A DNA stretch of 64,000 nt, from IMG/VR virus record IMGVR_UViG_3300021338_000003, positions 186,818 through 250,817 of that record; one strand, given 5' to 3'. Below are positions 1 to 61,484 of the stretch, in pieces; positions within the stretch are counted from its first letter, which is position 1; every line of letters begins with the position of its first letter. The translations under genes and the position numbers were made by a program. Under the pieces are notes generated by a model that saw only the letters and a program-made list of their open reading frames with translations, made no database searches and was not told the DNA's origin.

Positions 1-2028
1 GTTACGGATGTCTCTCAAAAGAGCCTAGAGAAGCTCACCGAGCAGACTCTCCTCTATTCCCGAGTACTGGGCACTGATGCCAATCGTCTGCAGGAAGAAG
101 CAGCCCAACGGATGTTCAAATATGGTGAGAGCCACGACGAAGCTCTCACCAATATCGTCCGTGTCCGTCATCAGGTAGTGGCTCTCAATGACGACCTCCG
201 GGACCTCTTTCCGAACCAAGCAGCCATCTTTGATGACGATTTTCAAAACCGCCTCGATGCTGTAGCCAAGGGAACCAAGGGATATACCCAGGACCTCGGC
301 AACATGTCGGCCGCCCTATCTGTTGCCATCGAGCGCGGACAAAAGATGGGGATGACATACAACCAGTCCATGGATGCGGCCGAGAAGTTCGCGAACTTCC
401 TGTCCGGGAACAACCTCGACCAACGTACCCAGACTATGGTGGGCCTGGATCTCTTGGAAAAGTTCCAAGAGAATATAGGCCCTGGCGGTAAGATATCCGA
501 GGACTATCTTGCCCAATTCAATCCACAAATCCAATCCCAATTGCAAATGATTGCTCAGGCCCGCCAACGAGGTCAGGTAGACACTATTGTAGCCCGACGC
601 CTACAGTCTACCCTGGCTTCCACTGAACAAGGCATGGGGGCCCAACTGGACCTTCTGCAAAACCTTGCCGGCCGCGGAGGTGATGTTGCTCACATCCTAC
701 AGCGCATGGGCATGGATGAAATGGAGGCATATACTGTTTCAGATCTCCTGGCTTCTGGTGGTGGTCGTGAAGAATTGATGGGCGCCATCAGAAGGAGCCG
801 AGGCGCTGCCAGCAATCAAGCTCGAACGGCCGGAGGGGAAGATGCTATGCGTCGAATGTCCCTAGGCCACCAGGGTGCTGTCGGGACATTGGCCGCCGAG
901 GCTGTTACTGGCCGCAACGTGGGACGCGATGCGGGCCAGTATATGGCCTATTTGGAGGACTCCCGGGTGACCGGAGCCGCTGCCGGAGGTATTGCCGCTT
1001 TTGGCATCGCCGGCCGTCTATATGATGCCTACAAAAAGGGCGGAGTATCGGGGGCCATGGGCGAAATTCCAGGGGCACTATCCGAGCAGGCTGGTGTGGG
1101 CGGCGGAGCGGGTGATACATATGGCGGGGGCAGCGGGGCTGCTGGTGCCATCCCCGCAGACAACGATATGGCCAATGCTGTGGCTATTGGTGTTGATGCT
1201 GTCCTCCAGAAGTACACCACAGAAGGCAACATGCTCCGAGTCAGCGGGGCTGGTGGTGAGGGCCCTGGTGGTCCCCGCAGTATGCTTGGAGATCTCTATG
1301 GGTCATATGTTGAACGAAAGGGCCAGCAGACAGACATGGCCAAGTCTATCATGCGTCTCCCCGGTGTACGTGGTGTCCTAGGCAAGATGATCGTTTCGAG
1401 CCTGATGGGCGGGGGCGCTACGGCGGCGGCTGGAGGTGGAGCAGCTGCTACCGGTGCTGGCGGTATAGGAGCCGGAACCGTAGCCGCCGGAGGGGCTGTT
1501 GTTGGTGGCGGAGCATTGGCTACGTTGGCTGCCATAGGCGCCGCTGGTACTGCTGTTGCTGGCGCCTTCTCGGCCCCCGCTGCTGGGTTCTTCGCCGCAG
1601 GCTCCCGAATGAATCGAGCCGAAGCCCTGCTTCGAAAGGTCAAGGGTGCTTCAAATCGCAAGGGGCCCCTTGGCGTCGGTATTGGTAAGGGGCTTGACCC
1701 TGGAGCTTGGGCCAAAATTTCCAAGGAGTTGGCCCAAGAGCCCGATTCCGTAGTACAGGGCCTGGTCAAAGACGGCGTCATTGCTCCAGAACTTGGCCAG
1801 GAAGTCCTCATGATGAAGAGGGCCAGTACCATGACCCAATCTGTGGCATCAGCCATACCGCAGGCTTCCAACGCTGCCATGGCCCAGAACCTCGCAGGTG
1901 GAGGAATGGCTTCTGCCGCCCTTGGAGAAGTGGCCAATATCCTTCCGAATGGTGATGTAATACTTCGAATCGTCAATGGGATGGCAATCCCAGCAGCGTA
2001 TGACAAGGCTAAATCCGATATGTACTAG
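1..2028 (+). CDS. C-terminal part of a large Gly/Ala-rich tail protein, tape-measure-like (5'-truncated)
   Basis: Frame 1 is open from base 1 to TAG at 2026-2028; long helical Ala/Gly/Met-rich low-complexity sequence. The function call is compositional inference only. Confidence 0.4.
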   Translation, partial: VTDVSQKSLEKLTEQTLLYSRVLGTDANRLQEEAAQRMFKYGESHDEALTNIVRVRHQVVALNDDLRDLFPNQAAIFDDDFQNRLDAVAKGTKGYTQDLGNMSAALSVAIERGQKMGMTYNQSMDAAEKFANFLSGNNLDQRTQTMVGLDLLEKFQENIGPGGKISEDYLAQFNPQIQSQLQMIAQARQRGQVDTIVARRLQSTLASTEQGMGAQLDLLQNLAGRGGDVAHILQRMGMDEMEAYTVSDLLASGGGREELMGAIRRSRGAASNQARTAGGEDAMRRMSLGHQGAVGTLAAEAVTGRNVGRDAGQYMAYLEDSRVTGAAAGGIAAFGIAGRLYDAYKKGGVSGAMGEIPGALSEQAGVGGGAGDTYGGGSGAAGAIPADNDMANAVAIGVDAVLQKYTTEGNMLRVSGAGGEGPGGPRSMLGDLYGSYVERKGQQTDMAKSIMRLPGVRGVLGKMIVSSLMGGGATAAAGGGAAATGAGGIGAGTVAAGGAVVGGGALATLAAIGAAGTAVAGAFSAPAAGFFAAGSRMNRAEALLRKVKGASNRKGPLGVGIGKGLDPGAWAKISKELAQEPDSVVQGLVKDGVIAPELGQEVLMMKRASTMTQSVASAIPQASNAAMAQNLAGGGMASAALGEVANILPNGDVILRIVNGMAIPAAYDKAKSDMY

Positions 2029-2043
2029 ACCATAGGAGGTCAC

Positions 2044-2520
2044 ATGCGGAAGTGTTATGTTTTTGCCAACCCTGAAGACATCACCCAATACATGATGTTG
2101 GGTTGTAGAGATAAGTTCCTGACGCCCCTAATCGATGTCAAAAAGGGCCAACTCTTCACCCTAGAAGACTCCGGGGACGGGAACCTTGTTGAAGATGGTA
2201 CGATCATCAACATCGCCCTGGAAGACGCCAAGTGTACTGGCGGAACAGCTGGTATCCAGTGTACCCCCGTCTTCAAGACCATAGGTGTTCAGATCTTCAA
2301 AATCGGGTACATTGAGGGGGATGTGACCAAGGGCATCAACGATGCCGCAGATACTGCTTTCCAGAAGTATTGTCTCGCTCGGGCCCACAAGGAAGGAACG
2401 GTAGTAGTGACCGTAGGTGACGAAACGTGGACCCCCAGGGAAGAAGACCTAGAGGAGTTTGCTCGCCTCTGGAGGAACGCCGAATCTATAGTGGTGGAGG
2501 GACCTGAAAATGTCCAGTGA
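2044..2520 (+). CDS. Hypothetical protein with a C-terminal portal-like segment
   Basis: AGGAGG SD upstream; C-terminal VGDETWTPREEDLEEFARLWRNAE resembles portal VGNEVWEPTDDQLDAIAAMWMGAE. Confidence 0.6.
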   Translation: MRKCYVFANPEDITQYMMLGCRDKFLTPLIDVKKGQLFTLEDSGDGNLVEDGTIINIALEDAKCTGGTAGIQCTPVFKTIGVQIFKIGYIEGDVTKGINDAADTAFQKYCLARAHKEGTVVVTVGDETWTPREEDLEEFARLWRNAESIVVEGPENVQ

Positions 2521-2764
2521 GAGGTTTGTATTGGCCATTTCCTCGGGAACCCTGAGGGTCCGCAATGATGAGCGGGTGTCGGTGTCCCTAACCATTCCCT
2601 TGGAGGACGGCAAGAAGAAGATTGTCCATGTGCGGGCCGGTCAGGAAACGGACCTCAGTCGAGTGAAAGGGACCAACATTGCCCTCATCCGAAAGTGTGC
2701 CCCACTCAAAGAGGACTTGATCTCCAATCGAATCTTCATTGTAGACACCTGGACGAAGAGATGA
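2510..2764 (+). CDS. Small hypothetical (probably virion) protein
   Basis: Coupled ORF; loosely resembles the N-terminal domain of ORF 49623..50309. Confidence 0.5.
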   Translation: MSSERFVLAISSGTLRVRNDERVSVSLTIPLEDGKKKIVHVRAGQETDLSRVKGTNIALIRKCAPLKEDLISNRIFIVDTWTKR

Positions 2765-3273
2765 GTCAGAGGGAGGGCTTCGTACACTGTGAGGTTTGTG
2801 CGAAGCTTACCCCCAAAGCCTTCGCCGACCGCCACCACGTCACACCCCAGGCGGTCGGCAAGCAGGCCGACAACTCGGATGAGAATCTCATATGGTTATG
2901 CTCCGGGTGTCACCAAAACCTCCACTCCCTGGCCCACTTCCTAATGAAAGGAAGGACAACCGAAGCCAAAGACCTCGCAGAATCCTGGTATACGAACACT
3001 GGTGCTGTTCGCAAGGTTCTCAACTTCGCATCTCATGTGGTTAAAGAGATGATAGCCATGCGGGAAGGCGAACGAGAACTCCCTGAAGAAGTCAGGATCA
3101 CAATCACGGTGCCGCGACGAACATATACCCTCTTGAGACTTATGAGCCTGGAGAAGAGGGGTCACAGACAGTTCACACCGTTTGTGAGAGACCATCTGGC
3201 TCAGATAGCTTCGAAGTACGAGGTGGGGTTCAAAGTGTCTCCCACTGAGTTCGAAACAACAGACTTCGATTGA
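2761..3273 (+). CDS. HNH endonuclease-domain protein
   Basis: CEVC..DRHHVTP...NLIWLCSGCHQNLH matches the HNH/Zn pattern; ATGA overlap with the upstream stop. Confidence 0.65.
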   Translation: MSQREGFVHCEVCAKLTPKAFADRHHVTPQAVGKQADNSDENLIWLCSGCHQNLHSLAHFLMKGRTTEAKDLAESWYTNTGAVRKVLNFASHVVKEMIAMREGERELPEEVRITITVPRRTYTLLRLMSLEKRGHRQFTPFVRDHLAQIASKYEVGFKVSPTEFETTDFD

Positions 3274-3303: not shown

Positions 3304-4068
3304 ATGTCTGACATTCTCACCATTACCGCGCTGGTCTCTTCGGTGACTATCCGGGGCTTCAGCAGCGATGAGCAGCCGCTGGCCCAGGGCCTGGCCTCGA
3401 AGAGCCTCGGCACCATTCCGTCTCTCGACACCTCGGCCACTGTGTCCGCCAGTGAGGCTGCTGCCTTCGGCGGTCGCTTGGCCACCGAGCTGTCGGCCCA
3501 CATCTCTGGCGGCACCATTCAGGTCACCCTGGGTGGTCAGGTCATGACCGCTGCCGAGATGAACCGTCTCGCTGCTGGTTACCTGCGTCAGCGCATCGGC
3601 TTCAACCTTGCAGGCAAAGTCTCGGCTATCACTGGTACCTGGACCGAGTCTTATGCCGGTTCTGGTGTCTGGGAGGTTGCCCGTACTGCTGCTGCTGCTG
3701 CTCAGTCTGCAGCCATCGACATCCCCACCTCTGTGGCGGGTATGCTCGTTTCCGGTATCGAGTTGACGTACAAGGTCGAGACTGCTCTGGTGACTGATGT
3801 GGATGTGGTCCTCTACAAGGCCACTTCCCCCGAAGATGGCTCGGCCCCTGCTGGTGCCAGCATCTCGGCCAGCCAGACGTATGATGCCGGGCATGACACT
3901 TCTGCCGAGCGTGGCGCTGTGGCCCAGCATACCATGGAGGTTTTGCTCGCTGCTCCGACCCAGGTGGCCGAGGGTGAGAACCTAACCCTCGAAGTCGAAG
4001 TCGATGGGACCGCTACAGGTGACGTCACCCTCCAAGCGTTTTGCCTGATCGCTGACATTCCTGTCTGA
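3304..4068 (+). CDS. Putative virion structural protein (paralog A)
   Basis: AGGAG SD; strongly biased codons; N-terminal ~100 aa paralogous to the next ORF. Confidence 0.55.
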   Translation: MSDILTITALVSSVTIRGFSSDEQPLAQGLASKSLGTIPSLDTSATVSASEAAAFGGRLATELSAHISGGTIQVTLGGQVMTAAEMNRLAAGYLRQRIGFNLAGKVSAITGTWTESYAGSGVWEVARTAAAAAQSAAIDIPTSVAGMLVSGIELTYKVETALVTDVDVVLYKATSPEDGSAPAGASISASQTYDAGHDTSAERGAVAQHTMEVLLAAPTQVAEGENLTLEVEVDGTATGDVTLQAFCLIADIPV

Positions 4069-4078
4069 GGGGTATACT

Positions 4079-4870
4079 GTGGATTTTGTCACTATCACTG
4101 CTCTGCTGACTGTAGTGTCCCTCCCTATTCTGGGAGGATACGGAGGGTCGCAGCCAACGAGCACTAACATCGGTCTCAAAACCGGGTATAAACGCACTGT
4201 GAATGTGCCGATATCAGAGCTTGTACAAGATGGTGGCCGAATTGCTTCCTCGATGGCCTCCCTCATCCGAGGTGGGGCCATCGAGGCCACCTTCAATGGC
4301 GATGTTTTCACATCGTTTCAGATGGAACGTCTGGCAGCTGGTTTCCTCACCAAGAAAGAAACCATACCATTTGGAAACATGATCGGAAACCAGACAGCCG
4401 GATACTCCGGTGTCTGGGACTTTCTATACGTGATTCTCGCAGGGTCGGGACAGTGGGTTTTGACCACTGCCGATGGTGCTTTTGGCCAAAATTCCTTGTA
4501 CATGGATTTTCGGCCAAAAACTGGGTCTATGCTTCGTGAGATCGAGGTATCATACAACATCGACGTCGATGTTGGTTCCGTGTCTGTATTTGCGTTCTAC
4601 GCAAATAAGACAGCCTCTGTAGGAGCGTGGGCGTCAAACGAACCCGGGTACAACATCGCTAGTGCTGTCCGAAACAAGACTGCCAGCTCTCCTTTTACTC
4701 TGGTTGCTGACCACAACGGGGCTAACAGTAACAACCTCGGCGCCAACCGAGTACTGGCTGATGACGAGCATTTCACCATATTTGTGTCCTTCGAGGGTAC
4801 CAGCCCCACTCTTGATGGTCAAGTACAGGTGACAGGCGTAGAAGTAACATACGAAGAGCCAGTGTTCTAA
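4079..4870 (+). CDS. Putative virion structural protein (paralog B)
   Basis: Shares TITAL...GGRIAS..LIRGGAIEATFNGDVFTSFQMERLAAGFL with paralog A; beta-rich C-terminus. Confidence 0.55.
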   Translation: MDFVTITALLTVVSLPILGGYGGSQPTSTNIGLKTGYKRTVNVPISELVQDGGRIASSMASLIRGGAIEATFNGDVFTSFQMERLAAGFLTKKETIPFGNMIGNQTAGYSGVWDFLYVILAGSGQWVLTTADGAFGQNSLYMDFRPKTGSMLREIEVSYNIDVDVGSVSVFAFYANKTASVGAWASNEPGYNIASAVRNKTASSPFTLVADHNGANSNNLGANRVLADDEHFTIFVSFEGTSPTLDGQVQVTGVEVTYEEPVF

Positions 4871-8781: not shown

Positions 8782-11700
8782 TTGCTATCTCCCTCAGCCC
8801 TCAGTATGTCCGAAGATGATTTCCTTATGCGGATGTTCTACCATGTAGAACCCGAGGACTTGGAGAAGCTCTACCTTTGGGCTGGAGGAGACACAAGAAA
8901 ACTTCGAGAGTTCTTGCAGATCGAGCTGTCAAGCAAGGAACTTGCCCGACGTCTGTATGAATCAGGCGTACAACTCATGCCCGAAGACCTCAAGAGAGCC
9001 AGGGTGGAGAGCCAAGAAGCCGTTCATAAGGCTGTAGCCAAATTCAGTTTGGGGGATGACTTTGACCCCGGTGAACTCATGAGAGAAGCGGCCGAGAAGA
9101 AACTCGACCCCTCGGTGTTTGCCGATATGGATTTTCGGGAAATCCCCAAAGCCAAAAACATCATTGACTGGATTACCAATAGGCAATTCCTCGATGCAGC
9201 GCCATTTCCCCGCCAGGTGCAATTCCTGCTGGCTCTATTTGAGGAGTGGTGCTTCTACTGCTCGGACGCCGAATTCGTCAAAGATATCCATCTCTCCCCT
9301 TATATCGGTGAGGACGGAGAACATCGCCGGGCTTGGACCCTAGATGAAATCCTTGAGCGGGTACAACTCACCGAGCATGGTGTATGCCCCAAATGCCACG
9401 CTACGTATCACCAGACGCTGGCTGACCCGGATGCACCTCACTGCGCCCCTAATGACTTTGCCCTCTGCTTGGGTCAGCGGTGTGTGGGCGCCAATACCAT
9501 CGTCCCCACCAACCAGGGGTTGTCTCCTATATCCCGTTTGGTCCCCCGGAGAGAACCTGATACCTTCTACCCCACCCCTGGACTGGAAGTGGCTAGTGGT
9601 GAGGGTGGGTCCTTGTCAGCGGAATCCTCCTATTATTCAGGGGTCCGGTCGGCCATCCAAATCGAAGCCGAGTGTGGATTTTCTCTTGAGGCCAGCTTGA
9701 TTCATCCCGTCCTTGTATTGAGGGATGACAAACAGGTGTGGGTGAAAGCTTCGGATCTCAATGTAGGGGATGCCCTAGTGGTATACCTTGGAGACAATGT
9801 CTGGGGAGACAAGGCGGAAATTTCCAACCAGGAAGCCTATGAAATGGGGGCCAAAGTGGCCCGGGACCCTACGTATTGGGGCAAGAGAGAAGAAACCATT
9901 TTCCAACATAGGCCGTCAGTTGTGGAGGCTTTTCTCAGGGGTCTTCAGGTAACCAAGGTCAAGAATACTGCGGATTCCCCTTGGAGCCGAAACCAAAAGA
10001 CCACTTCCGAACGCGTCATCTCTACACCCTGGGAGAGTCTGGCCAGGTACGTCCAAGCCGCATACATCAACATGGGTCGATTCCCCTTCGTGACTCGCAA
10101 GGATGGCAAGTTTGTTATCTATGCCGGAGAAACGGCCACTGAAGGAGAGTGGTTCGTACGAGTCACCTCCACTCGATTCATTGGTGACCGACATCTCTTT
10201 GACTTTCACGTCCCAGAGAAGCACCGGTTCGTAGGAAACGGGCTCATCAACCACAACTCGGGTAAATCCCGCGTCGCTGAGTTCATTTCCTCCTACCAAA
10301 ATCATCGATTCCAGATGCTGGCCCCCACTCCCCAACGACACTTCGGGGAAGATCGCACCCAGCAATTCACGGCGATGTTCACGGCCCTAGACCTGGCCCA
10401 GTCCGCTGACACCCTCTGGGGCAATTACCACATCCGACTTCAAACCGCCCCCTGGTTCAAGAAGTATCATGAGTGGCTCGATTACCATGGCAAAAAGATC
10501 GGTGTCGAAATGTATCGCATCAAGGATACATACCATTCCTGGGTACCCACCATTCTACAAGATCGGCTCAAGCCTCCATTCGCCAAAGCCATGCGTGGTC
10601 GTACCGGCTATATGATGGGTATTGATGAGATCGGCATGTTCGCCAAAGCAGAAAACTCGGTACGTGCCAATGCTGAAGAAGTGTTCACTGCCATGAACAA
10701 CACTCTGTTCACTTTGCGCGAGGCATCCGATGCTCTGAACCGGAAGGCAATCCACACTCCTACAGCTCTCATGATTTGTGTATCCAGTCCTTGGGAGCTT
10801 TTGGACAAAATCATGGGTCTCATTCGAGGTGCCAAGGATAACCCCCGTCGTGTGGCCTTCCACTTCCCTACTTGGGAGTGCGTGGCCCCTGATACCCTGG
10901 TTCTGACCCCTGAAGGTCCCCTACCGATTGGGAACATAGCCCAAGAGGAAGGACTTCGGCCAGAATACTCCCGAGTTCATCTTGGCAGCAAGAATTCCTT
11001 TGGCTCGATTTCTCATGCCTTTCGCAGCCCCAAGGAACGATACGTTCGGACCATCACTACCGAAAGTGGCAATAACCTCACCGCCAGCCTAGACCACCGA
11101 ATCCTGTCCATTCAAGATGACGGACGTATCGAGTTCACCAAAATGATGGACCTCAACCCAGAAGACACGGTTCTCGTATCCTGGGAGGGGCTACCCGAGC
11201 CGCAGGAAAACAGCCCGGTACCTGGGTCCACCAAGAAGCTCATTCACAGGCTATATGTACGCCTCGGGGCCGAAAGAGACCCCATGGCAAACCGGTTGCG
11301 GGGTCAGGCCACGGTATACGACATCCGTACTCACTTGGCTCACTTGGAGCGGTCCTACCCTACAGCCTTCCATCGCAACTCGGCCCAGGTGGAAGAACTC
11401 CGAGAGTATTTTGGTCCATACATCTTCACCAAGATCTTCTCCATCACCGAGGGCAAGTCTGTGGTATGTGATATCACGGTACCTGGAGACCACCAGTATT
11501 GGTCCAACGGATTCATCAGCCACAACTGCAATCCCAAGATCTTCCGAGATTCCAAGCAGGTCGTGACCGAGTATGCTGAAGACCCGGTCAAAGCTGACCG
11601 AGATTGGGCTGCCATCCCGCCCCTGGCTGATAACCCGTTCCACCAGAACACGGCCGCGCTAGACCAAATCCTTGAAGACTGCCGGGCCAGAAAGCCCCTG

Positions 11701-12693
11701 TTCGTTCAGGGCATGAAGACCGGGCAGTCCCGGGCAGGGCAACACTATGTGTACGCTGTCCCCAATCAGCTGCAGTCAGACAGGTCTATTCCCCGAATGA
11801 TGACCATTGATGCCGGGGAGGTCAACAACTCTTTCGCCCTGAGCATCTGGTCTGTTGCTCGGGCCAAGTCTCCTGATGTCATGGGTGCCAGGGAGGAGGA
11901 CCTTGGGTATGAGGAGGAAGAGGATGAAGATGTTCGTCGCATCCTTGCACTTCGGGATGAATACGAGGAGGAGGAAACCCAAAGCGAAGGCTCTAAGGGT
12001 ATGTCCGACTACCTCAACCTTGATGGTATCATCGAGGTCATCCCTTTCAAAGACCAGGCTGGTAACCACCACAAGGTCAATTTTAAGAAGATGTACGACC
12101 TCTGCCTATTGCCCCTGGTGAGAAGCCTCAATGTCAAGCTTCTAGTGGCCGACCGGTGGAACATGGCCTCTATCTTTGATGGTCTGAGAGACGAGGGGGT
12201 TGATTGTCACCACTTCACCCTGAAGTGGAAGGACTTCATCGATTTTAAGCAAAAGCTTTCCTCCCGAGAGGTACAATTGCTTGGGTTGGAGAAGCCATAT
12301 GAGTCTATCTTCGACGATTATGAACGGGCCATCTTCAACGCCCCCAACCTCCACCTTGTGGTGCAAACCAAGACCGTGCGACGCACTGGCCGTCAAGTAG
12401 TGAAGCCAAAGGGCGGAACCGACGACCTCTACCGCACCATGGTTCTGGCCCATCGCTTTGCTATGAATGACGACCCCAAGGACCAAGCCTGTGACCCGAA
12501 GGGCGACCCCTATCTGGAAGTCCTGATGAGATATGGCCCCGGTGTGCATCCCCTGAATGCACACCGACCTGGAATCGGTGTAGTCCGTTTGCGGTCGAGC
12601 GGCCGTCCAATAGTCGGAAATAGCCAGGTCCAAGGTGTAGGTGGATTCCACTCGCGTACGCTTTCGGGACGCGCAAGAAAGAAGCGGAGATAG
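8782..12693 (+). CDS. terL: Terminase large subunit with two inteins
   Basis: TTG start; Walker A reconstituted as LGQR|SGKS after intein removal; Walker B MMGIDEIG; nuclease MMTIDAGEVNNSFAL, VADRWN, GGTDDLY; adjacent to portal. Confidence 0.9.
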   Translation: MLSPSALSMSEDDFLMRMFYHVEPEDLEKLYLWAGGDTRKLREFLQIELSSKELARRLYESGVQLMPEDLKRARVESQEAVHKAVAKFSLGDDFDPGELMREAAEKKLDPSVFADMDFREIPKAKNIIDWITNRQFLDAAPFPRQVQFLLALFEEWCFYCSDAEFVKDIHLSPYIGEDGEHRRAWTLDEILERVQLTEHGVCPKCHATYHQTLADPDAPHCAPNDFALCLGQRCVGANTIVPTNQGLSPISRLVPRREPDTFYPTPGLEVASGEGGSLSAESSYYSGVRSAIQIEAECGFSLEASLIHPVLVLRDDKQVWVKASDLNVGDALVVYLGDNVWGDKAEISNQEAYEMGAKVARDPTYWGKREETIFQHRPSVVEAFLRGLQVTKVKNTADSPWSRNQKTTSERVISTPWESLARYVQAAYINMGRFPFVTRKDGKFVIYAGETATEGEWFVRVTSTRFIGDRHLFDFHVPEKHRFVGNGLINHNSGKSRVAEFISSYQNHRFQMLAPTPQRHFGEDRTQQFTAMFTALDLAQSADTLWGNYHIRLQTAPWFKKYHEWLDYHGKKIGVEMYRIKDTYHSWVPTILQDRLKPPFAKAMRGRTGYMMGIDEIGMFAKAENSVRANAEEVFTAMNNTLFTLREASDALNRKAIHTPTALMICVSSPWELLDKIMGLIRGAKDNPRRVAFHFPTWECVAPDTLVLTPEGPLPIGNIAQEEGLRPEYSRVHLGSKNSFGSISHAFRSPKERYVRTITTESGNNLTASLDHRILSIQDDGRIEFTKMMDLNPEDTVLVSWEGLPEPQENSPVPGSTKKLIHRLYVRLGAERDPMANRLRGQATVYDIRTHLAHLERSYPTAFHRNSAQVEELREYFGPYIFTKIFSITEGKSVVCDITVPGDHQYWSNGFISHNCNPKIFRDSKQVVTEYAEDPVKADRDWAAIPPLADNPFHQNTAALDQILEDCRARKPLFVQGMKTGQSRAGQHYVYAVPNQLQSDRSIPRMMTIDAGEVNNSFALSIWSVARAKSPDVMGAREEDLGYEEEEDEDVRRILALRDEYEEEETQSEGSKGMSDYLNLDGIIEVIPFKDQAGNHHKVNFKKMYDLCLLPLVRSLNVKLLVADRWNMASIFDGLRDEGVDCHHFTLKWKDFIDFKQKLSSREVQLLGLEKPYESIFDDYERAIFNAPNLHLVVQTKTVRRTGRQVVKPKGGTDDLYRTMVLAHRFAMNDDPKDQACDPKGDPYLEVLMRYGPGVHPLNAHRPGIGVVRLRSSGRPIVGNSQVQGVGGFHSRTLSGRARKKRR
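9481..10257 (+). mobile_element. Intein 1 in TerL (259 aa, degenerate LAGLIDADG remnant)
   Basis: Starts CVGANTIVPT, ends FVGNGLINHN followed by Ser; inserted within Walker A. Confidence 0.9.
10879..11526 (+). mobile_element. Intein 2 in TerL (216-aa mini-intein)
   Basis: Starts CVAPDTLVLT, block B LTASLDHRIL, ends YWSNGFISHN followed by Cys. Confidence 0.9.
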
Positions 12694-12695
12694 AA

Positions 12696-12983
12696 ATGGC
12701 CAGGAGAAAAACGGATAGGCTTTCTGCTCTAGAACGAGCCGGCTTTCGGACTGGTGAGGCTCGCAAAAACTCCTATGACCAACTTGTAGAGGCATCCCAC
12801 AAGAATCGGATCGAGGCTTTTGTCTATACTCATCCCTCTGGAACTTCCCGGGAGTCTACCGAGGCTGCCCACAGTTGCCCCCGTTGCGGTAAGGACATGA
12901 ATTGGGTTCGCCTGGCCTCCGAAGAGAAGGCTGGATATTGTGTTCCCTGCCGCTACACTCTTCCGGTGCCCCAGGACGACTGA
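12696..12983 (+). CDS. Small Zn-ribbon protein
   Basis: CPRCG...CVPC; lies between terL and portal with a TGATG coupling. Confidence 0.6.
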   Translation: MARRKTDRLSALERAGFRTGEARKNSYDQLVEASHKNRIEAFVYTHPSGTSRESTEAAHSCPRCGKDMNWVRLASEEKAGYCVPCRYTLPVPQDD

Positions 12984-15034
12984 TGTTCAAGACATTCTCG
13001 AATGACAAAAGGTCTGTGTTTGGGTCCGGAACCCCTGCACACGCCATCCGCAAGTCCAAGGGGGCAGCAGCTGTCACCGCCGGCAATATTCGTCGGTCCA
13101 AAAACAGTGAAAGGGACTTCATCAACAAGGTGGTTACTGCCCAATCCGACTTCGGGCTGGACCGATACAACCCGGTGCACGATGACCTTGAGGAAGGATC
13201 GGTTGTTGAGAACTGGGTCCCAAAGGACCTCCCCAGTCTCAATCGGCTGATGCGCCGCATCTATCGTCGAGACGATGTCGGCGGCCCAATGGTCGACATC
13301 TATCAGGAAATGGCATGGTCAGACTACGATCTGACCGGCATGGAAGACGAGGCCATGTACGAGCCATATGCTCAGTCCCTGGCCAACCTCAACCCTATGG
13401 ACTGGATGCCTGATATTTCAAATACCGTCTTGGTGGACGGTCGCGGTATCTATGGTCTCCTGTTCGATGAGGCTGAGGGGGTATTCACAGGCTCTGTCCC
13501 TCATGATTCCTCCTTCTGTCGAATCACCCCTGTCCCTATCTTCGGGCAGGACCCCTTGGTTGACATCCAGGCCAGCCCGGTGTGGCGCAACTTCGCCACC
13601 AGCAACGACCCTCGTATGGCGGAGATGCGAAGCTCCCTGCCCCCGAACATTCTCAAAGTTCTTCGAGACAACACGGGATATACCCCCCTTGATCCTCTGA
13701 GCACCGTCATTGTACGTCGGCAAGCTTCGGCTCATGACCACCTAGGAACCTCAATATACACCCGCCTCATCAACTTCATTGCCATCCAGAAGGCTCTAAT
13801 TGATACCACTGTCATAGCCCTTCGTCGGCGTGGCGCTGGCCTCCTGCATATCCAAGTTGGCAACGAGGTGTGGGAACCTACTGATGACCAGTTGGACGCC
13901 ATCGCCGCCATGTGGATGGGTGCCGAGGAGGACCCGGGCGGTGGTGTTGTGGTGACTCGCAACGGAATCCAAGCAGACCGAAGCCAAAGTGCTGTTGGTG
14001 ACATCTGGAAATTCAGTGACGAATATCCCTTCCTATCCGAGGGGAAGATGCGGTCCTTGGGAATTTCCGATGCCTTTCTATCTGGGGATGCCACGTACAA
14101 TAACATGGCCAACGCCCTGTCGGTCTTCATGGAGCGTCTGCGTGGTTTCCGCATGCGCATCACGAACAAGGTGCTAGTGCAGCGGGTGTTCCACACCCTG
14201 GCTCGGGTCCACGGATATATCAAGCCCGAAAAGAACTCCCCGCAGGGTCGCCGTCAAGCCTTCTTGATGCCTCTACGTCAGGCCCTCGAAGTCCCTGCTG
14301 ACCGCCTCATTGTGCCTGACATCCATTGGCACAAGAGCCTTCAGCCTCAGGGTGATGAGGAGCTGATCCGTCTCCTTGAAACCCTGAAGGAGAACGGACT
14401 GCCGGTCACCAAGCAGCACTTCGCTGCTGCCGCCGGGTTCAACCTCAACAAAGCCATGGATATGCTTGAGGATGACATCAAGCAGGAAGAGGAAGTTCGG
14501 AAGTGGCGAGCTGAGATTGAAGGTGGTGACGAGGAAGGGATTTTTGGTCGGGTCCGTCTCGTACCCCACACCATCCAGCAAATCAAGAAGCCTCGGGAAC
14601 TCCGTGTTGCAGCCTCGAAGGCCCTGGAGGACCTCGGGTTCTTCCGGAACGGACCCTTCCTGGGACTATCTCTCCAGCGTGCCCAACGGGCCCTAGACCG
14701 GATGCTACCCGACCTGAAGAGGGATGGAGAACGGGCACCCTTGCGGACCATCATGGCCGATGTTGACCTGGAACGAGAGCAACGCAATGTTATGCGCTAC
14801 CTCTTGGTCCGACTAGGCTTCGCACCCTCCTACCAAATGAACGACCAGCGCCTCGAAAGAGTGGCTCGGGCTATTGCACAAGCGCTCCCGGCCCGTGAAG
14901 CCCACCAGGAGATTGAGCTTCTAGTGAAGGTCTGCGGGGGTAAGAAGGAGCATTACGCCGAGCGCGTAACACGTCTCCCTAACGGTCCGAGTGGGGCTCA
15001 TCTCCTCACGGGTTATGTTCCGCCAGGAATGTAA
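12983..15034 (+). CDS. Portal protein
   Basis: Position after terL; size; GPMVDIYQEMAWSDY, GTSIYTRL, KMRSLGISDAFLSGDATYNN pattern resembles large-phage portals. Confidence 0.8.
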   Translation: MFKTFSNDKRSVFGSGTPAHAIRKSKGAAAVTAGNIRRSKNSERDFINKVVTAQSDFGLDRYNPVHDDLEEGSVVENWVPKDLPSLNRLMRRIYRRDDVGGPMVDIYQEMAWSDYDLTGMEDEAMYEPYAQSLANLNPMDWMPDISNTVLVDGRGIYGLLFDEAEGVFTGSVPHDSSFCRITPVPIFGQDPLVDIQASPVWRNFATSNDPRMAEMRSSLPPNILKVLRDNTGYTPLDPLSTVIVRRQASAHDHLGTSIYTRLINFIAIQKALIDTTVIALRRRGAGLLHIQVGNEVWEPTDDQLDAIAAMWMGAEEDPGGGVVVTRNGIQADRSQSAVGDIWKFSDEYPFLSEGKMRSLGISDAFLSGDATYNNMANALSVFMERLRGFRMRITNKVLVQRVFHTLARVHGYIKPEKNSPQGRRQAFLMPLRQALEVPADRLIVPDIHWHKSLQPQGDEELIRLLETLKENGLPVTKQHFAAAAGFNLNKAMDMLEDDIKQEEEVRKWRAEIEGGDEEGIFGRVRLVPHTIQQIKKPRELRVAASKALEDLGFFRNGPFLGLSLQRAQRALDRMLPDLKRDGERAPLRTIMADVDLEREQRNVMRYLLVRLGFAPSYQMNDQRLERVARAIAQALPAREAHQEIELLVKVCGGKKEHYAERVTRLPNGPSGAHLLTGYVPPGM

Positions 15035-27261: not shown

Positions 27262-28443
27262 ATGGCAAACCCCTACGGAAAGTTTTCGGGTGCTACCACC
27301 CAGATGGTGCTTGCGGGCACTGATGCTCCGGTTGTGAGTGAAGCTCGCAACTTCGGTCGCACTGTCACTGGCTCCGTCCAGCAGTCCGGCTCCGGCCTTG
27401 CGCCCACCTCCCGTGGCCTAGCCCACGGTGGCGGTGAGCGTCTGTTCGGCGCCAATGGCGAGATCAATGCCTCCAGCAAGCGCGAGCTGATGGAGAAGAT
27501 CGGCCTCCTGCTTGACCAAGCCCAGCATGGTGGCTTCGAGCGCCAGATGACCCCCGAGTACAGCCGTGTGGCCCAGGCCCGTGCTGTTGCTCTCGCCGAA
27601 GCCCAGGCCAACCCCGACGGTCCCGGCATGCGGATCATCGCCGAGGCGACCGGCAACGAGGTCTTCGAGACTCTCGGCCGTGATGGTCTCGTGCGTCAGT
27701 TCCTCCTGATCAACGACCTCAATGGTAGTGACGACGTCAACCGCGTCAAGGTCCGGAAGAAGGACGTGTCCGCGGTCATCTCAACCACGAACATCAACAC
27801 CACCAAGCAGATGGTTCGCCAGATGTGGGTGTACCCGGGCGAGTACTACGTCAAGTCCTTCGTCTCCATTGAGGAGAAGGAGCTGTCGCAGAACGGTGCC
27901 GAGATGCTCGACGAGAAGTTCACGGACATGCTTGAGCAGCACATGGTCCAAGAGGACCGGCACATGAAGAGCCACTTCGATGACCAGGTGGGTATCGTCA
28001 ACCCCGGGCTGACCTTCAACAAGTTCACCCCGCTCATCTTCACCCAGGCTCGCGTGGCTGTCGAGGAGCAGGGCAACCCCTGTGTCCGCGCTGCCCTCTC
28101 CTGGGACCTCTGGGTCGACATTCTCGCTGAGCCGGAGTTCGCCAACTACTTTGACCCGGTCCACAAGCACGCTGCCATCCTCGATGGCAAGCTCGGCGCC
28201 ATCCAGAACGTCCAGCTCTACACCGACGGCTTCCGGTACGATACCCTGCAGGTGCTCGGCACCCGTGAGGTCTACTTCACCGGTCCGGCGGCTACGGTCG
28301 GTGTCCTGGGTCAGCGGAGCCCGATCCAGACGAAGGAGACGGATCGCTACAACCTCGGCCAGGCCGAGCGTGGATGGTTCTCCTTCCAGATCCAGTCCAT
28401 GACCACGTTCCCCCGTGCCGTGAGCCGCGCTCGCGGTATCTGA
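27262..28443 (+). CDS. Major capsid protein
   Basis: 393 aa; follows protease, scaffold and decoration genes; extreme C-ending codon bias; strong terminator; HK97-like size. Confidence 0.8.
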   Translation: MANPYGKFSGATTQMVLAGTDAPVVSEARNFGRTVTGSVQQSGSGLAPTSRGLAHGGGERLFGANGEINASSKRELMEKIGLLLDQAQHGGFERQMTPEYSRVAQARAVALAEAQANPDGPGMRIIAEATGNEVFETLGRDGLVRQFLLINDLNGSDDVNRVKVRKKDVSAVISTTNINTTKQMVRQMWVYPGEYYVKSFVSIEEKELSQNGAEMLDEKFTDMLEQHMVQEDRHMKSHFDDQVGIVNPGLTFNKFTPLIFTQARVAVEEQGNPCVRAALSWDLWVDILAEPEFANYFDPVHKHAAILDGKLGAIQNVQLYTDGFRYDTLQVLGTREVYFTGPAATVGVLGQRSPIQTKETDRYNLGQAERGWFSFQIQSMTTFPRAVSRARGI

Positions 28444-32911: not shown

Positions 32912-33775
32912 ATGGGATACGAACAGGCACTTTCGACCAAGAAGCTGGCCACCCACTGCATCCTGTGTGGTCAGCCGCTCCGGGACCCCATCTCGGTTGA
33001 GACTGGTGTTGGTCCGATTTGTCGTGCCAAGAACGGCTACAATGAGGCTGGCAACCCCGAGACCCGTGTCCAGTGTAGCAAGCTCATCCATGCTGCTGCT
33101 CAGCCGGGCTTGACTGCCACCGAGGTCTACGACTACGCCGACCAGATCGAGGCCCTCGGGTTCCCTGATGTGGCCGCCAAAATCCGGGAACGGTTCCATC
33201 GGGCCTACGAATACGAGCAGCGGGGAACCCTCCCAATCAAGATGAAGAGGGAGAATTACCGCCAGTGGACCGACGCCATCTGGATGCACATCCCCTACGA
33301 TGCCGAAACAACCAAGAAGTTCAACCAAGCCTTGAAGGACCGCATTTGGTCCAGTTATCGGACGGGCACGAAGGATGACACTGGAACTTTCTGGTGGATC
33401 GTCGACCCGAAGCGGGCTGACGCCGTCGACGCTCTCCTCCGGGAGTTCTATACCGGTCGTATGTGCCACTCCTCGTTCGGAGACTTCATCATCGGCGAGG
33501 AACTCGGAGGTGGTGATACCGAGAAGGCCCCTCAGGAGGAAGCCCCTCCAGTCCCTGGTCCCCCTGCAGCGACGCCCGGAGCCTCTACCCCCTCGTTTGG
33601 AGGTAGTGGCGGAAAGGGAGGCAGCGGCGGCGAGTGGACCCCCATCCCCGGCCCGAGCGGATCCAAGACGTCGACCCCCGATGACCCCATCACCCCCTCG
33701 CGCAGCCCCCGTGAGGTGGCCGCGGAGCGTGGGCGTGCCCGGGCCGAAGAACTTTTGAAATCTCTGGGATTGTGA
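32912..33775 (+). CDS. DUF6011-like Zn-binding early protein
   Basis: CILCGQPLRDPISVETGVGPICR signature; AGGAGG SD; Pro/Gly/Ser-rich tail. Confidence 0.65.
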   Translation: MGYEQALSTKKLATHCILCGQPLRDPISVETGVGPICRAKNGYNEAGNPETRVQCSKLIHAAAQPGLTATEVYDYADQIEALGFPDVAAKIRERFHRAYEYEQRGTLPIKMKRENYRQWTDAIWMHIPYDAETTKKFNQALKDRIWSSYRTGTKDDTGTFWWIVDPKRADAVDALLREFYTGRMCHSSFGDFIIGEELGGGDTEKAPQEEAPPVPGPPAATPGASTPSFGGSGGKGGSGGEWTPIPGPSGSKTSTPDDPITPSRSPREVAAERGRARAEELLKSLGL

Positions 33776-34374
33776 TGGACCCTCGGCTACTACCCTTCGA
33801 CACCTGGTACAAAGCCAGGTTGCGCTCCGACGCCCCCAAGGATGTGGCCGACATTTTCCGAGGCCACACCAGGCCCTTCGTATATCTGCTCCGCACCCCA
33901 AGCAACATTCCAGTGCCCCGCTTCAAATTGGGCCGATTTGTTGCCTGGAGCGGGGCAGATCGTACCCATGGTCACCTGACCGCGGAAAAGATTAGGGACT
34001 CCTTCGAAATCCTTCAGGTCCATGACGACCAGGAAAACCTCAATGAACGGACCAAGAGATTGTTCCGCAGGAAAAAGCAAATGAGCAAGATGGACGAAGT
34101 TGTTGCGAAGTACGAGAACGAGGTCACAGCCTCCCAGAATGGCCAATTCTACAACGATGAGGGGGAGGAACTTGACGCAGAAGAAGTTGAGAGTCATGTC
34201 GAAGCCACTCTCAAGGAGTTGGAGAAGCTCAAGAAGCAGACAGAAGACTTCCAACGTAAGCTCAAGGCCGGCAGTCTGAAAACGGAGGATGGGTTTATGT
34301 CGTTCATGTCCGTGATCATCCATGGGTATGACCAAACGGGACCTGTGGGCATCAGCTTCGAGTCCAACGATTAG
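33772..34374 (+). CDS. Hypothetical protein with a probable internal second start at 34081 (MSKMDEVVAKYENEVTAS)
   Basis: The internal ATG is preceded by AGGA and begins a leader-family peptide. Confidence 0.55.
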   Translation: MMDPRLLPFDTWYKARLRSDAPKDVADIFRGHTRPFVYLLRTPSNIPVPRFKLGRFVAWSGADRTHGHLTAEKIRDSFEILQVHDDQENLNERTKRLFRRKKQMSKMDEVVAKYENEVTASQNGQFYNDEGEELDAEEVESHVEATLKELEKLKKQTEDFQRKLKAGSLKTEDGFMSFMSVIIHGYDQTGPVGISFESND

Positions 34375-60734: not shown

Positions 60735-61102
60735 AGGTCGTTCTGTGGCTGGATGATATGAGGGACCCCAAGTCCTACGCCTACAAGGACCTGCTGGACA
60801 CCTTCTGTCCAGGTCGCGAAAAGGTGGTCTGGGCAAAGGATGCGTTTGCCTTCAAGGAGGAGTACCTTCAGGTATTCGAAGACCCCGACTCCCAGTTGGT
60901 TGGGGTCTTCTTTGACAACGACCTTGGGACCCCCGGAGGGGCGGACGGCCGCCATGTGTTCACCTGGATGGAACGGCACGTTCGAGAGAACAACATCCCC
61001 GAGTTTGAGTTGTACGCCCAGACCTCGAACCCCGCTGCCAAACGCGAGTTGAACGGTGGGTTCGCGTCCTTGCGGAGGTTCTGGGCAGGCATGGAGGACT
61101 AG
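60731..61102 (+). CDS. Cyclic-phosphate-processing receiver (cREC) domain protein
   Basis: LWLDDMRDP...VFFDNDLG...DG..V..W...TSNPAA... Confidence 0.7.
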   Translation: MKVVLWLDDMRDPKSYAYKDLLDTFCPGREKVVWAKDAFAFKEEYLQVFEDPDSQLVGVFFDNDLGTPGGADGRHVFTWMERHVRENNIPEFELYAQTSNPAAKRELNGGFASLRRFWAGMED

Positions 61103-61145
61103 GATTCCTAAACAGATTCAGGACATAGCCAGGAGGGCTAGAAAA

Positions 61146-61484
61146 ATGAGCAAGATGAATGGCTTTGGGGTAGCATTTGAGTCCGAAGGCGACTTCTACG
61201 GTATGGAGGGGGCCATCCAGGAGATGCAAAGTGCCACTTGCGGTGCTATCTTCGATGGGCGCGGGGAACTCATAGTCGTTACAAACGACGAGCGATGCAG
61301 CCTAGAAGACTTCATCTCGGAATACGGCAGGATGTATGGCGAGAGCTATGCCCCCAGCAAAAAAGAAGTGGTGAAGACACATAACGTGACCGGAGACGTC
61401 ACTGCCACGAGCAAGATGGATGAAATTGTGGCGAAGTACAAGAACGAAATCACGGCGGCGGGGGACATTCGTTTGAAGGACTAG
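61146..61484 (+). CDS. Hypothetical protein ending in a copy of the leader peptide
   Basis: AGGAGG upstream; C-terminus TSKMDEIVAKYKNEITAAGDIRLKD. Confidence 0.55.
   Translation: MSKMNGFGVAFESEGDFYGMEGAIQEMQSATCGAIFDGRGELIVVTNDERCSLEDFISEYGRMYGESYAPSKKEVVKTHNVTGDVTATSKMDEIVAKYKNEITAAGDIRLKD

What the first reader, a model, noticed from the sequence alone, without database searches (positions are those of the whole stretch)
2401..2484. A small protein carries a 28-aa copy of a portal segment
ORF 2044 has VVVTVGDETWTPREEDLEEFARLWRNAE; the portal (13844-13927) has LHIQVGNEVWEPTDDQLDAIAAMWMGAE. These align without gaps with 10/28 identities, including both Trp and the Pro, plus conservative changes. 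Inference: the segment may be the portal clip region contacted by terminase and adaptors, so ORF 2044 could be a portal mimic or packaging regulator, or a captured portal fragment.
Basis: partly seen in the sequence, partly recalled or inferred. Interest (0 to 1): 0.6.

Follow-up and report, generated by a model that had tools for sequence, protein, structure and literature searches.

The report
Small phage protein copying portal clip
A 158-residue protein of a 251-kb marine jumbo phage ends in a genuine, diverged copy of the portal "clip", the part that docks the DNA-packaging motor and the neck; similar unrecognised small proteins occur in several related jumbo phages, and their function is unknown.

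Summary
ORF 2044-2520 is a real gene with a strong ribosome-binding site and in-frame codon bias. Its residues ~115-148 match the portal family profile. A clip HMM built from 35 portals, searched against all 3,519 six-frame ORFs of the 250.8-kb genome, finds the portal and then this ORF (E 1.6e-7); the next hit has E 0.96. hhalign gives P 6e-7. The portal segment lies between the two stem helices, so it is the clip. The protein itself has no relatives in 1.8 billion representatives. However, the same clip module occurs in other small proteins (110-196 aa) of related jumbo phages that also carry a full portal: four uncultured records plus Burkholderia BcepSaruman gp209, Achromobacter Motura gp019 and Pseudomonas HRDY3 XDJ15160. 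Two of these are mis-annotated as "portal protein". The modules resemble their own phage's portal clip more than other portals (permutation p 3e-4). ORF 2044 alone shares its portal's unusual Trp in the clip helix. Function is untested: the co-fold gave no answer and the single-sequence fold was poor. My best guess is that the protein acts at the portal vertex through clip-type contacts. Interest is moderate to high.

The parts
2034..2039 (+). Shine-Dalgarno AGGAGG, 4 nt before the ATG of ORF 2044
   Evidence: Read directly from the sequence.
2044..2520 (+). ORF 2044 (P0003), 158 aa; a real gene with no relatives outside this phage
   Evidence: ORF list and translation. Codon-usage log-likelihood is +0.56 per codon in frame and negative in four of the five other frames (one reverse frame +0.19, still lower). 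The word search and the exhaustive search find only the protein itself.
2044..2340 (+). N-terminal ~99 residues, predicted beta-rich, no detectable family
   Evidence: No Pfam or PHROG hit. Strands appear in a low-confidence AF2 model. No Cpn10 match.
2341..2394 (+). Predicted helix, residues 100-117, preceding the module; possibly a remnant of the end of the portal stem helix
   Evidence: AF2 secondary structure. tblastn of P0003 residues 94-147 hits a relative's portal at the equivalent place. Weak evidence.
2386..2487 (+). Core of the clip-like module (residues 115-148): strand, G-x3-W-x-P tip, acidic helix
   Evidence: hhalign P 5.9e-7. Clip HMM E 1.6e-7 genome-wide, and E 1.1e-5 with distant portals only. 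G, W and P are invariant in all modules.
2485..2502 (+). Candidate second strand of the module (residues 148-153); the DPxG loop that precedes it in portals is missing
   Evidence: MAFFT alignment A4 puts it on the portal's second clip strand, with one invariant Val. AF2 predicts strand 149-152. Not covered by the HMM match.
12902..15034 (+). Portal protein gene (TTG start; the called form starts at ATG 12983, 683 aa)
   Evidence: phrog_16240 E 2e-100. Called form P0006. AF2 model plus Foldseek hits to T4, lambda and G20c portals.
13838..14011 (+). Portal clip domain, the excursion between the two stem helices (called-portal residues 286-343)
   Evidence: Helices 263-285 and 344-358 flank it. 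T4 gp20 description of stem-clip-stem (PMC4493910).
13823..13927 (+). Portal stretch matched by ORF 2044 (P0004 residues 308-342)
   Evidence: BLASTP; translation.
8782..12693 (+). Large terminase with intein insertions; a candidate shared partner of clip and module
   Evidence: phrog_17415 E 7e-136. Intein_splicing, 2 stretches. Partnership is inferred only.

Best explanation
ORF 2044 encodes a real 158-residue protein. Its last ~45 residues are a diverged copy of the core of the portal clip domain: first strand, the G-x3-W-x-P tip, the acidic helix, and probably a shortened second strand.

It belongs to a scattered and so far unrecognised class of small (110-196 aa) proteins in phiRSL1/BcepSaruman-type jumbo phages. 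These proteins consist of one or two stand-alone clip modules joined to unrelated, variable extra parts. Each is encoded far from a complete portal gene.

Because the only shared and conserved part is the module, I infer that the module is the working part and does what a clip does. In portals the clip does two things. It forms the inter-subunit beta-sheet of the ring. It also presents the exposed tip to which large terminase, and later the neck, attach. The small protein would therefore act at the portal vertex in one of two ways:
- pairing with portal clip strands during ring assembly, or
- competing with the portal for terminase or neck proteins.
The variable N-terminal domain would supply the specific effect.

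Shown: the gene is real; the resemblance is statistically real and matches the family profile; the matched portal segment is the clip; the class recurs; the modules track their own phage's portal.

Inferred: the fold identity of the module, any binding, and the biological role.
For: - Gene reality: AGGAGG 4 nt upstream of the ATG; in-frame codon bias.
- Homology: hhalign P 5.9e-7. The clip HMM ranks ORF 2044 second in the whole genome at E 1.6e-7 against 0.96 for the next ORF. It still scores E 1.1e-5 with only distant portals in the HMM. The G, W and P matched are invariant or nearly so in 35 portals.
- Clip location.
- Class, uncultured members: P0061 (G001, E 1.5e-16, with a separate full portal at E 7e-176); small ORFs in G021, G020 and G014; P0062 and P0063.
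- Class, cultured members: BcepSaruman gp209, Motura gp019 and HRDY3 XDJ15160.
- P0003 against Motura module 2: 13/27 identical, E 5e-7. Against HRDY3: E 3e-5.
- HRDY3's protein is a full-length member of phrog_11049 and has the same layout as ORF 2044, an N-domain followed by the module.
- Tracking of the own portal: summed score 1020 against 876 +/- 57 for permuted pairings, reached in 11 of 40,320 permutations. ORF 2044 and its own portal are the only rows with Trp where the others have Phe, Leu or Val.
- Clip roles (terminase, neck, inter-subunit sheet): PMC4493910 and PMC10359639.
Against: - There is no direct evidence of binding. The co-fold gave no answer.
- The ORF's fold is not established (pLDDT 38).
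- The matched stretch is short (~34 residues), and the DPxG loop of the clip is missing.
- ORF 2044 itself has no orthologues, even in the closest available relatives, although those records are incomplete.
- The stand-alone genes sit in different neighbourhoods: near MCP and sheath in the P0063 contig, and among replication genes and GroES in BcepSaruman and Motura. There is therefore no consistent context pointing to packaging.
- A closed 12-mer ring has no free sheet edge to dock on.
- The modules have long branches in the tree, which is also compatible with relaxed constraint.
Confidence: 0.55

Rival explanations
1. Relic or re-used fragment. A piece of a portal gene was copied and fused to another ORF, and the small strand-helix unit now serves as a generic structural element or oligomerisation tag. 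It has no role at the portal vertex.
For: - Extra domains and gene neighbourhoods vary among class members.
- The stand-alone modules have long terminal branches, 3.2 for ORF 2044 against a median of 0.51.
- ORF 2044 has lost the DPxG loop.
- ORF 2044 has no orthologues.
Against: - The invariant tip residues G, W and P and the acidic helix are kept in all ten modules despite 30-45% identity.
- The modules track their own portal (p 3e-4), which a generic tag need not do.
- The module recurs in at least eight phages.
Confidence: 0.2
2. Virion neck or adaptor-like component. The module self-assembles into a ring by the same strand exchange as the portal clip, and the ring stacks under the portal as part of the head-tail connector.
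For: - P0063 and the G014 protein lie between the major-capsid-like gene and the tail sheath, where connector genes usually sit.
- The clip sheet is the main-chain inter-subunit contact of portal rings (PMC4493910).
- Tandem modules occur in gp209 and gp019.
Against: - ORF 2044, gp209, gp019 and XDJ15160 are not in a connector gene block.
- No virion proteomics was found.
- No oligomer prediction was run.
Confidence: 0.12
3. Chance or convergent short motif. A strand, turn and amphipathic acidic helix with G, W and P arose independently and merely resembles the clip.
For: - The matched core is only ~34 residues.
- In the six-frame all-against-all of the window, the pairwise hit sits at the top of the noise.
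- BLASTP between ORF 2044 and P0061 does not detect the module.
Against: - Genome-wide HMM E 1.6e-7, with a gap of seven orders of magnitude to the next ORF.
- The match holds with distant portals only.
- Other stand-alone modules reach E 1e-16 to 1e-20 and include the DPxG loop and the second strand.
- ORF 2044 shares the lineage-specific Trp with its own portal.
Confidence: 0.05
4. Hitch-hiking with a homing endonuclease. The clip-coding piece was carried to this site with the nearby HNH endonuclease gene and is tolerated rather than used.
For: - An HNH endonuclease gene lies two genes downstream at 2695-3273.
- The genome is rich in mobile elements, with inteins in the terminase and in relatives' portals.
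Against: - No DNA-level similarity remains between the two copies.
- Portal inteins in relatives sit about 50 residues after the clip, not in it.
- The scanned neighbours in the four uncultured loci and the annotated neighbours in BcepSaruman, Motura and HRDY3 include no HNH gene next to the small gene.
- The ORF has a good ribosome-binding site and codon bias.
Confidence: 0.08

Closest known systems
Clip domain of tailed-phage portal proteins (T4 gp20 residues 279-358; here phrog_16240 portals of phiRSL1-, BcepSaruman- and pEa_SNUABM-type jumbo phages)
   Same: Same sequence signature: strand, G-x3-W-x-P tip, acidic helix and a likely second strand. The profile match falls at the same profile positions.
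   Different: ORF 2044 has no stem, wing or crown. It is 158 aa against ~680 aa for the portal. It lacks the DPxG loop and carries an unrelated N-terminal domain.
phrog_11049 (unknown function), with Pseudomonas phage HRDY3 XDJ15160 as a full-length member
   Same: Same layout, an N-terminal domain of ~100 residues followed by one clip module. P0003 matches the HRDY3 module at E 3e-5.
   Different: P0003 does not match phrog_11049 at E <= 1. The N-terminal domains show no similarity. XDJ15160 keeps the DPxG loop and a C-terminal tail.
Burkholderia phage BcepSaruman gp209 (YP_009904142) and Achromobacter phage Motura gp019 (YP_009903608)
   Same: Small proteins (154 and 189 aa) built on stand-alone clip modules, in phages that also have a full portal. 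Motura module 2 is the closest single relative of the ORF 2044 module, at 48% over 27 residues.
   Different: They have two tandem modules each and lie among replication-type genes, two genes upstream of a phage GroES. ORF 2044 has one module at its C-terminus, and its genome has no Cpn10.
phrog_31680 (unknown function, 84 positions)
   Same: Weak match to P0003 residues 96-153 (E 1e-3).
   Different: The family is uncharacterised. The same profile gives matches in 8 of 14 control bacterial genomes at the loose threshold, so the link is unreliable.

Membership tests
Portal protein (phrog_16240; clip-stem-wing-crown fold) | Full-length match including stem helices, wing, tunnel loop and crown | tested here: not met
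   The full portal HMM matches ORF 2044 only at profile positions 285-320. The protein is 158 aa. No other portal remnants occur in neighbouring frames.
Portal clip module (sequence signature of this portal family) | Significant match to a profile of the clip segment | tested here: met
   E 1.6e-7 genome-wide. E 1.1e-5 with the own portal clade removed. hhalign P 5.9e-7.
Portal clip module (sequence signature of this portal family) | Invariant Gly, Trp and (near-invariant) Pro of the tip | tested here: met
   All three are present and aligned.
Portal clip module (sequence signature of this portal family) | DPxG loop and second strand after the helix | tested here: not met
   The loop is absent. 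A short strand-like stretch (residues 148-153) aligns with the second strand only in MAFFT, not in the HMM match.
Portal clip module (sequence signature of this portal family) | Strand-helix-strand fold superimposable on a portal clip | tested here: inconclusive
   The AF2 single-sequence model has pLDDT 38. Its secondary-structure order (H100-117, E121-124, E127-129, H133-145, E149-152) fits, but the model is not usable for superposition. The clip of the monomer portal model is itself low-confidence.
phrog_11049 (N-domain plus clip module, unknown function) | Profile match over the whole protein | tested here: not met
   Not among P0003's PHROG hits at E <= 1. The portal and the other stand-alone proteins do hit it.
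Clip partner-binding protein (terminase, neck or portal binder) | Physical contact with portal, large terminase or neck proteins | tested here: inconclusive
   The co-fold with two portal stem-clip fragments gave ipSAE 0.00, which is no answer either way. Terminase and neck proteins were not tested.
GroES / Cpn10 | Match to PF00166 | tested here: not met
   No Pfam hit for P0003. No Cpn10 match anywhere in the genome. The weak PDB hit to a chaperonin-11 chain (E 0.77) is taken as noise.
Head-tail adaptor or neck protein | Presence in virions and ring formation under the portal | not testable with these tools
   Only gene position is available. One subgroup (P0063 and the G014 protein) lies between capsid and sheath genes. 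ORF 2044 does not.

The most novel reading that the evidence does not exclude
Jumbo phages of the phiRSL1/BcepSaruman portal lineage encode dedicated stand-alone clip decoys that co-evolve with their own portal. These proteins would control when and where large terminase or neck proteins dock, or would cap portal subunits until ring assembly. That would be a previously unknown regulatory layer of head assembly and genome packaging, and ORF 2044 would be a divergent member.
Probability: 0.3. Interest if true: 0.8.

Novelty: new variant of a known kind. Interest (0 to 1): 0.65.

Why it matters
The clip is the hub of the portal vertex. It holds the ring together and is the docking site first for the packaging motor and then for the neck. 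Finding the clip as a free-standing module in small proteins gives a concrete, testable handle on how portal assembly or motor and neck docking is regulated in jumbo phages. The module recurs in at least eight related phages and follows each phage's own portal sequence. Three members are in cultured phages (BcepSaruman, Motura, HRDY3), so binding, virion content and knock-out phenotypes can be tested directly. The result also corrects an annotation error: small proteins of 154 and 196 aa are labelled "portal protein" in public records.

Tried and rejected
**Searches for relatives of P0003**
- The word search found only the protein itself.
- The exhaustive phmmer search found only itself plus P0005, a 1,497-aa CARDB/Ig protein whose score comes from four identical repeats matching the N-terminal part. 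I took this as spurious.
- tblastn against 50,697 phage records found nothing.
- The PDB sequence search gave only noise.
- The ESM Atlas search by features and by structure, on the whole protein and on residues 96-158, gave no usable hit.

**Structure and binding**
- The single-sequence AF2 fold of P0003 has pLDDT 38 and cannot be superimposed or searched.
- Complex prediction with P0003 and two copies of portal residues 250-420 gave ipSAE 0.00, "no answer". This counts neither for nor against binding.
- The portal profile against PDB sequences found no relative. The clip assignment therefore rests on model topology and Foldseek.

**Synteny and orthologues**
- There is no ORF 2044 homologue within 10 kb of the portal in two related contigs.
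- There is none in the two closest IMG/VR records, which are 57% and 19% complete.

**Ideas tested and dropped**
- A GroES-like N-domain, prompted by GroES genes near gp209 and gp019 and by a weak PDB hit. No Cpn10 signal was found.
- A recent duplication. The DNA alignment shows no more than codon-level similarity.
- A decayed full portal pseudogene. There are no other portal fragments nearby.

**Origin and expression**
- The tree of 29 modules is unresolved with 54 columns. It cannot tell one origin from several.
- No RNA run was found. Three seawater DNA runs hold the stretch with no differences, so no selection test was possible.

**Literature**
- Three full-text searches and three papers gave no description of stand-alone clip proteins.

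- No alternative genetic code was used.
- Read laying was given 901 letters.

Full report
**Setting.** The window is bases 186,818-250,817 of a 250,817-bp IMG/VR virus record, estimated 91% complete. Three seawater metagenome runs hold the stretch around the ORF with no differences. Several genes lie on the + strand:
- a large terminase with intein insertions (8782-12693; phrog_17415 E 7e-136);
- the portal (12902-15034; phrog_16240 E 2e-100);
- the major head protein (27262-28443; phrog_2522).

The portal's nearest cultured relatives are jumbo phages such as Vibrio GR11A, Rhizobium RHph_N46, Ralstonia phiRSL1 and Erwinia pEa_SNUABM.

**The observation.** ORF 2044-2520 encodes 158 residues (P0003). 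Three points argue that it is a real gene:
- AGGAGG lies four bases before the ATG, and the next ORF has its own GGAGGG.
- The reading frame scores +0.56 log2 units per codon on the phage's own codon usage. Four of the five other frames are negative, and the remaining reverse frame scores lower (+0.19).
- Both the N-terminal part and the module part score positive.

**Is it more than chance?** Taken alone, the pairwise match is significant. BLASTP gives 12/35 identities, 32.3 bits and E 6e-6. The Smith-Waterman score is 71 against 33 +/- 4.6 for shuffles. In an all-against-all of the window's six-frame ORFs the pair ranks only third, with E 0.003 per query, which is borderline.

Profiles decide the matter. 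I aligned 35 portals of the family (A1). The Gly and the first Trp of the match are invariant, and the Pro is nearly so. Results against this family:
- hhalign of P0003 against the alignment gives probability 92% and P 5.9e-7.
- An HMM of the 53-column clip region, run without filters against all 3,519 six-frame ORFs of at least 40 aa in the whole genome, finds the portal (E 3e-26), then ORF 2044 (E 1.6e-7, 28.7 bits). Nothing else scores better than E 0.96.
- With the phage's own portal and its six closest relatives removed, ORF 2044 still scores E 1.1e-5, with the next ORF at 0.27.

The resemblance is therefore to the family signature, not only to this phage's portal. At the DNA level nothing beyond codon-level similarity remains, so the copy is old. 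No other portal fragments lie nearby, so this is not a decayed second portal gene.

**Where the segment sits in the portal.** The AF2 model of the portal (35-row alignment, mean pLDDT 71) has long helices at 263-285 and 344-358 in called-portal numbering. The matched stretch, 281-315, spans the end of the first helix and the excursion between the two. A 39-residue helix follows at 372-410. The model's best Foldseek matches are the T4, lambda, G20c and HK97 portals.

[quoted passage not shown] The clip is exposed outside the capsid and is the attachment site of the packaging ATPase and later of the neck. The clip itself is low-confidence in the monomer model, as expected for a part that folds across subunits.

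**The ORF has no relatives, but the module does.** P0003 has no homologue in the word search, in 1.8 billion representatives (the one extra hit is repeat-inflated), in GenBank phages or in the PDB.

A scan of IMG/VR with the portal alignment returned one locus where only the clip matched. It is a 160-aa ORF (P0061) in a 216-kb record. That record has a complete portal 85 kb away (portal E 7e-176, small ORF E 1.5e-16).

Searching 32 further related records with a clip profile (A3) found second, small-ORF hits in three of them: G021 (E 5e-17), G020 (E 1e-12) and G014 (E 1.4e-7). A profile search added P0063, a 110-aa relative of the G014 protein.

Among eight cultured jumbo phages with this portal type, three have such genes in addition to their portal:
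- Burkholderia BcepSaruman gp209, 154 aa, two tandem modules;
- Achromobacter Motura gp019, 189 aa, two modules;
- Pseudomonas HRDY3 XDJ15160, 196 aa, an N-terminal domain followed by one module.

RefSeq and GenBank label gp209 and XDJ15160 "portal protein", which they are not. XDJ15160 is a full-length member of phrog_11049, a family of unknown function (E 4e-36). The other small proteins, and the portal clip itself, hit that profile only over the module.

P0003 matches the second Motura module at 13/27 identities (E 5e-7) and the HRDY3 module at E 3e-5. In a joint alignment the Gly, Trp and Pro of the tip and a Val of the second strand are invariant. P0003's last residues align with the second strand, with the DPxG loop deleted. 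Outside the module these proteins are unrelated to each other, apart from the G020/G021 and G014/P0063 pairs.

**The modules follow their own portal.** For the eight genomes that have both, I scored each of the ten stand-alone modules against 19 portal clips. The module's own portal ranks 1st to 5th every time. The summed score of the true pairings is 1020. Over all 40,320 permutations of the genome labels the mean is 876 +/- 57, and only 11 permutations reach the observed value.

One column is telling. In the clip helix every portal and every module has Phe (rarely Leu or Val), except this phage's portal and ORF 2044, which both have Trp. Within the portal alignment that Trp is confined to this phage's portal and its five closest relatives in A1.

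An ancient single duplication without further interaction would leave a module equally distant from all portals. The pattern therefore points to separate lineage-specific copies, to gene conversion, or to co-evolution through a shared partner or direct contact. A maximum-likelihood tree of the 54 usable columns is unresolved and cannot choose among these. It does show that the stand-alone modules have long branches (3.2 for ORF 2044 against a median of 0.51).

**Context.** Around ORF 2044 nothing is informative:
- Upstream is an 885-906-aa Gly/Ala-rich ORF with no family hit.
- Downstream are an 84-aa ORF, an HNH endonuclease (2695-3273), a pair of paralogues and several unknowns before the terminase.

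P0063 and the G014 protein lie between a major-capsid-like gene and the tail sheath, a connector-type position. gp209 and gp019 lie among replication-type genes, two genes upstream of a phage GroES. The class therefore has no single conserved neighbourhood. This phage has no Cpn10 at all.

**How it most likely works.** The only shared, conserved element of the class is the module, and within it the tip residues and the acidic helix. [quoted passage not shown] I therefore think the module is the working part and makes clip-type contacts. Either it pairs with portal clip strands before the ring closes, acting as a cap, chaperone or poison of assembly, or it offers terminase or neck proteins a second docking surface, acting as a decoy or timer. 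The variable remainder of each protein would specify the outcome.

This is inference. The co-fold of P0003 with two portal stem-clip fragments returned no answer. The single-sequence fold of P0003 is unreliable, although its order of elements (helix, strand, helix, strand over residues 100-152) fits.

The main rival is that the copied piece now serves as a generic small structural unit with no link to the vertex. A neck-ring role fits one subgroup. Chance is very unlikely. Hitch-hiking with the HNH gene has little support.

**Novelty.** I found no description of stand-alone clip proteins in three full-text searches, in a comparative survey of 224 jumbo phages, or in the structural papers read. 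The domain is known. Its occurrence as a free module in small proteins that track the cognate portal appears not to have been noticed. ORF 2044 is a divergent member with no orthologues. I rate it a new variant of a known kind, with moderate to high interest, because cultured members make the question directly testable.

Noticed in passing
window 8782-12693 (+): The large terminase gene (phrog_17415, E 7e-136) is 1,303 codons long and carries two intein-splicing stretches. Relatives' terminases of ~1,307-1,311 aa have Intein_splicing and LAGLIDADG hits as well.
   Followed up: partly
window 3304-4068 and 4079-4870 (+): Two adjacent ORFs (254 and 263 aa) are paralogues, 31% identical over 256 residues (E 6e-17). 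Neither has a Pfam or PHROG hit.
   Followed up: no
window 2695-3273 (+): An HNH endonuclease (PF01844, E 2e-7) lies two genes after ORF 2044. Its GTG start overlaps the 84-aa ORF 2510-2764 by 70 bases, so one of the two starts may be wrong.
   Followed up: partly
window 1-2028 (+); genome 186,125-188,842: An 885-906-aa Gly/Ala-rich ORF ends 16 bases before ORF 2044. It has no hit in Pfam or PHROGs, and neither do nine other ORFs in the 20 kb upstream.
   Followed up: partly
window 33715-34371 and 61053-61481 (+): Two otherwise unrelated ORFs share a 17-residue stretch at 76% identity (32.7 bits). This was the second-best non-self pair in the window's all-against-all comparison.
   Followed up: no
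window 40354-45576 (+): A 1,740-aa ORF has SNF2-related, ResIII/DEAD and Helicase_C domains.
   Followed up: no
relatives' portals (P0012, P0013, P0038, P0040, P0055, P0059, P0060; loci L026, L027, L029, L050): Many portals of this family carry inteins (PF14890, PF14528). In four loci the tblastn match to this phage's portal breaks off at about residue 367-371, roughly 50 residues after the clip, which suggests an insertion there.
   Followed up: partly
NC_049850.1 118317-118781; PQ015379.1 165203-165793: The public records name the 154-aa BcepSaruman gp209 and the 196-aa HRDY3 XDJ15160 "portal protein". Both phages have a full-length portal elsewhere, so the names are over-annotations from the clip match.
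   Followed up: yes
L086 4874-5962 (+) and L087 4213-4995 (-): In the two high-GC records G021 and G020, a longer ORF in another frame overlaps the C-terminal half of the small clip-module ORF. It is itself conserved between the two records (47% over 306 aa). The true end of the small genes there is uncertain.
   Followed up: no
window 13190-13255 (portal residues 97-118): A second, weak BLASTP segment (E 0.033) aligns the ORF 2044 module with an N-terminal portal stretch containing a W-x-P motif that is also conserved in the family consensus. This may be an internal echo of the clip tip motif or may be chance.
   Followed up: no
NC_049850.1 119474-119755; NC_049849.1 16291-16566: In both BcepSaruman and Motura a phage GroES gene lies two genes downstream of the stand-alone clip-module gene. 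This may simply reflect the kinship of the two phages. The window's phage has no Cpn10.
   Followed up: partly
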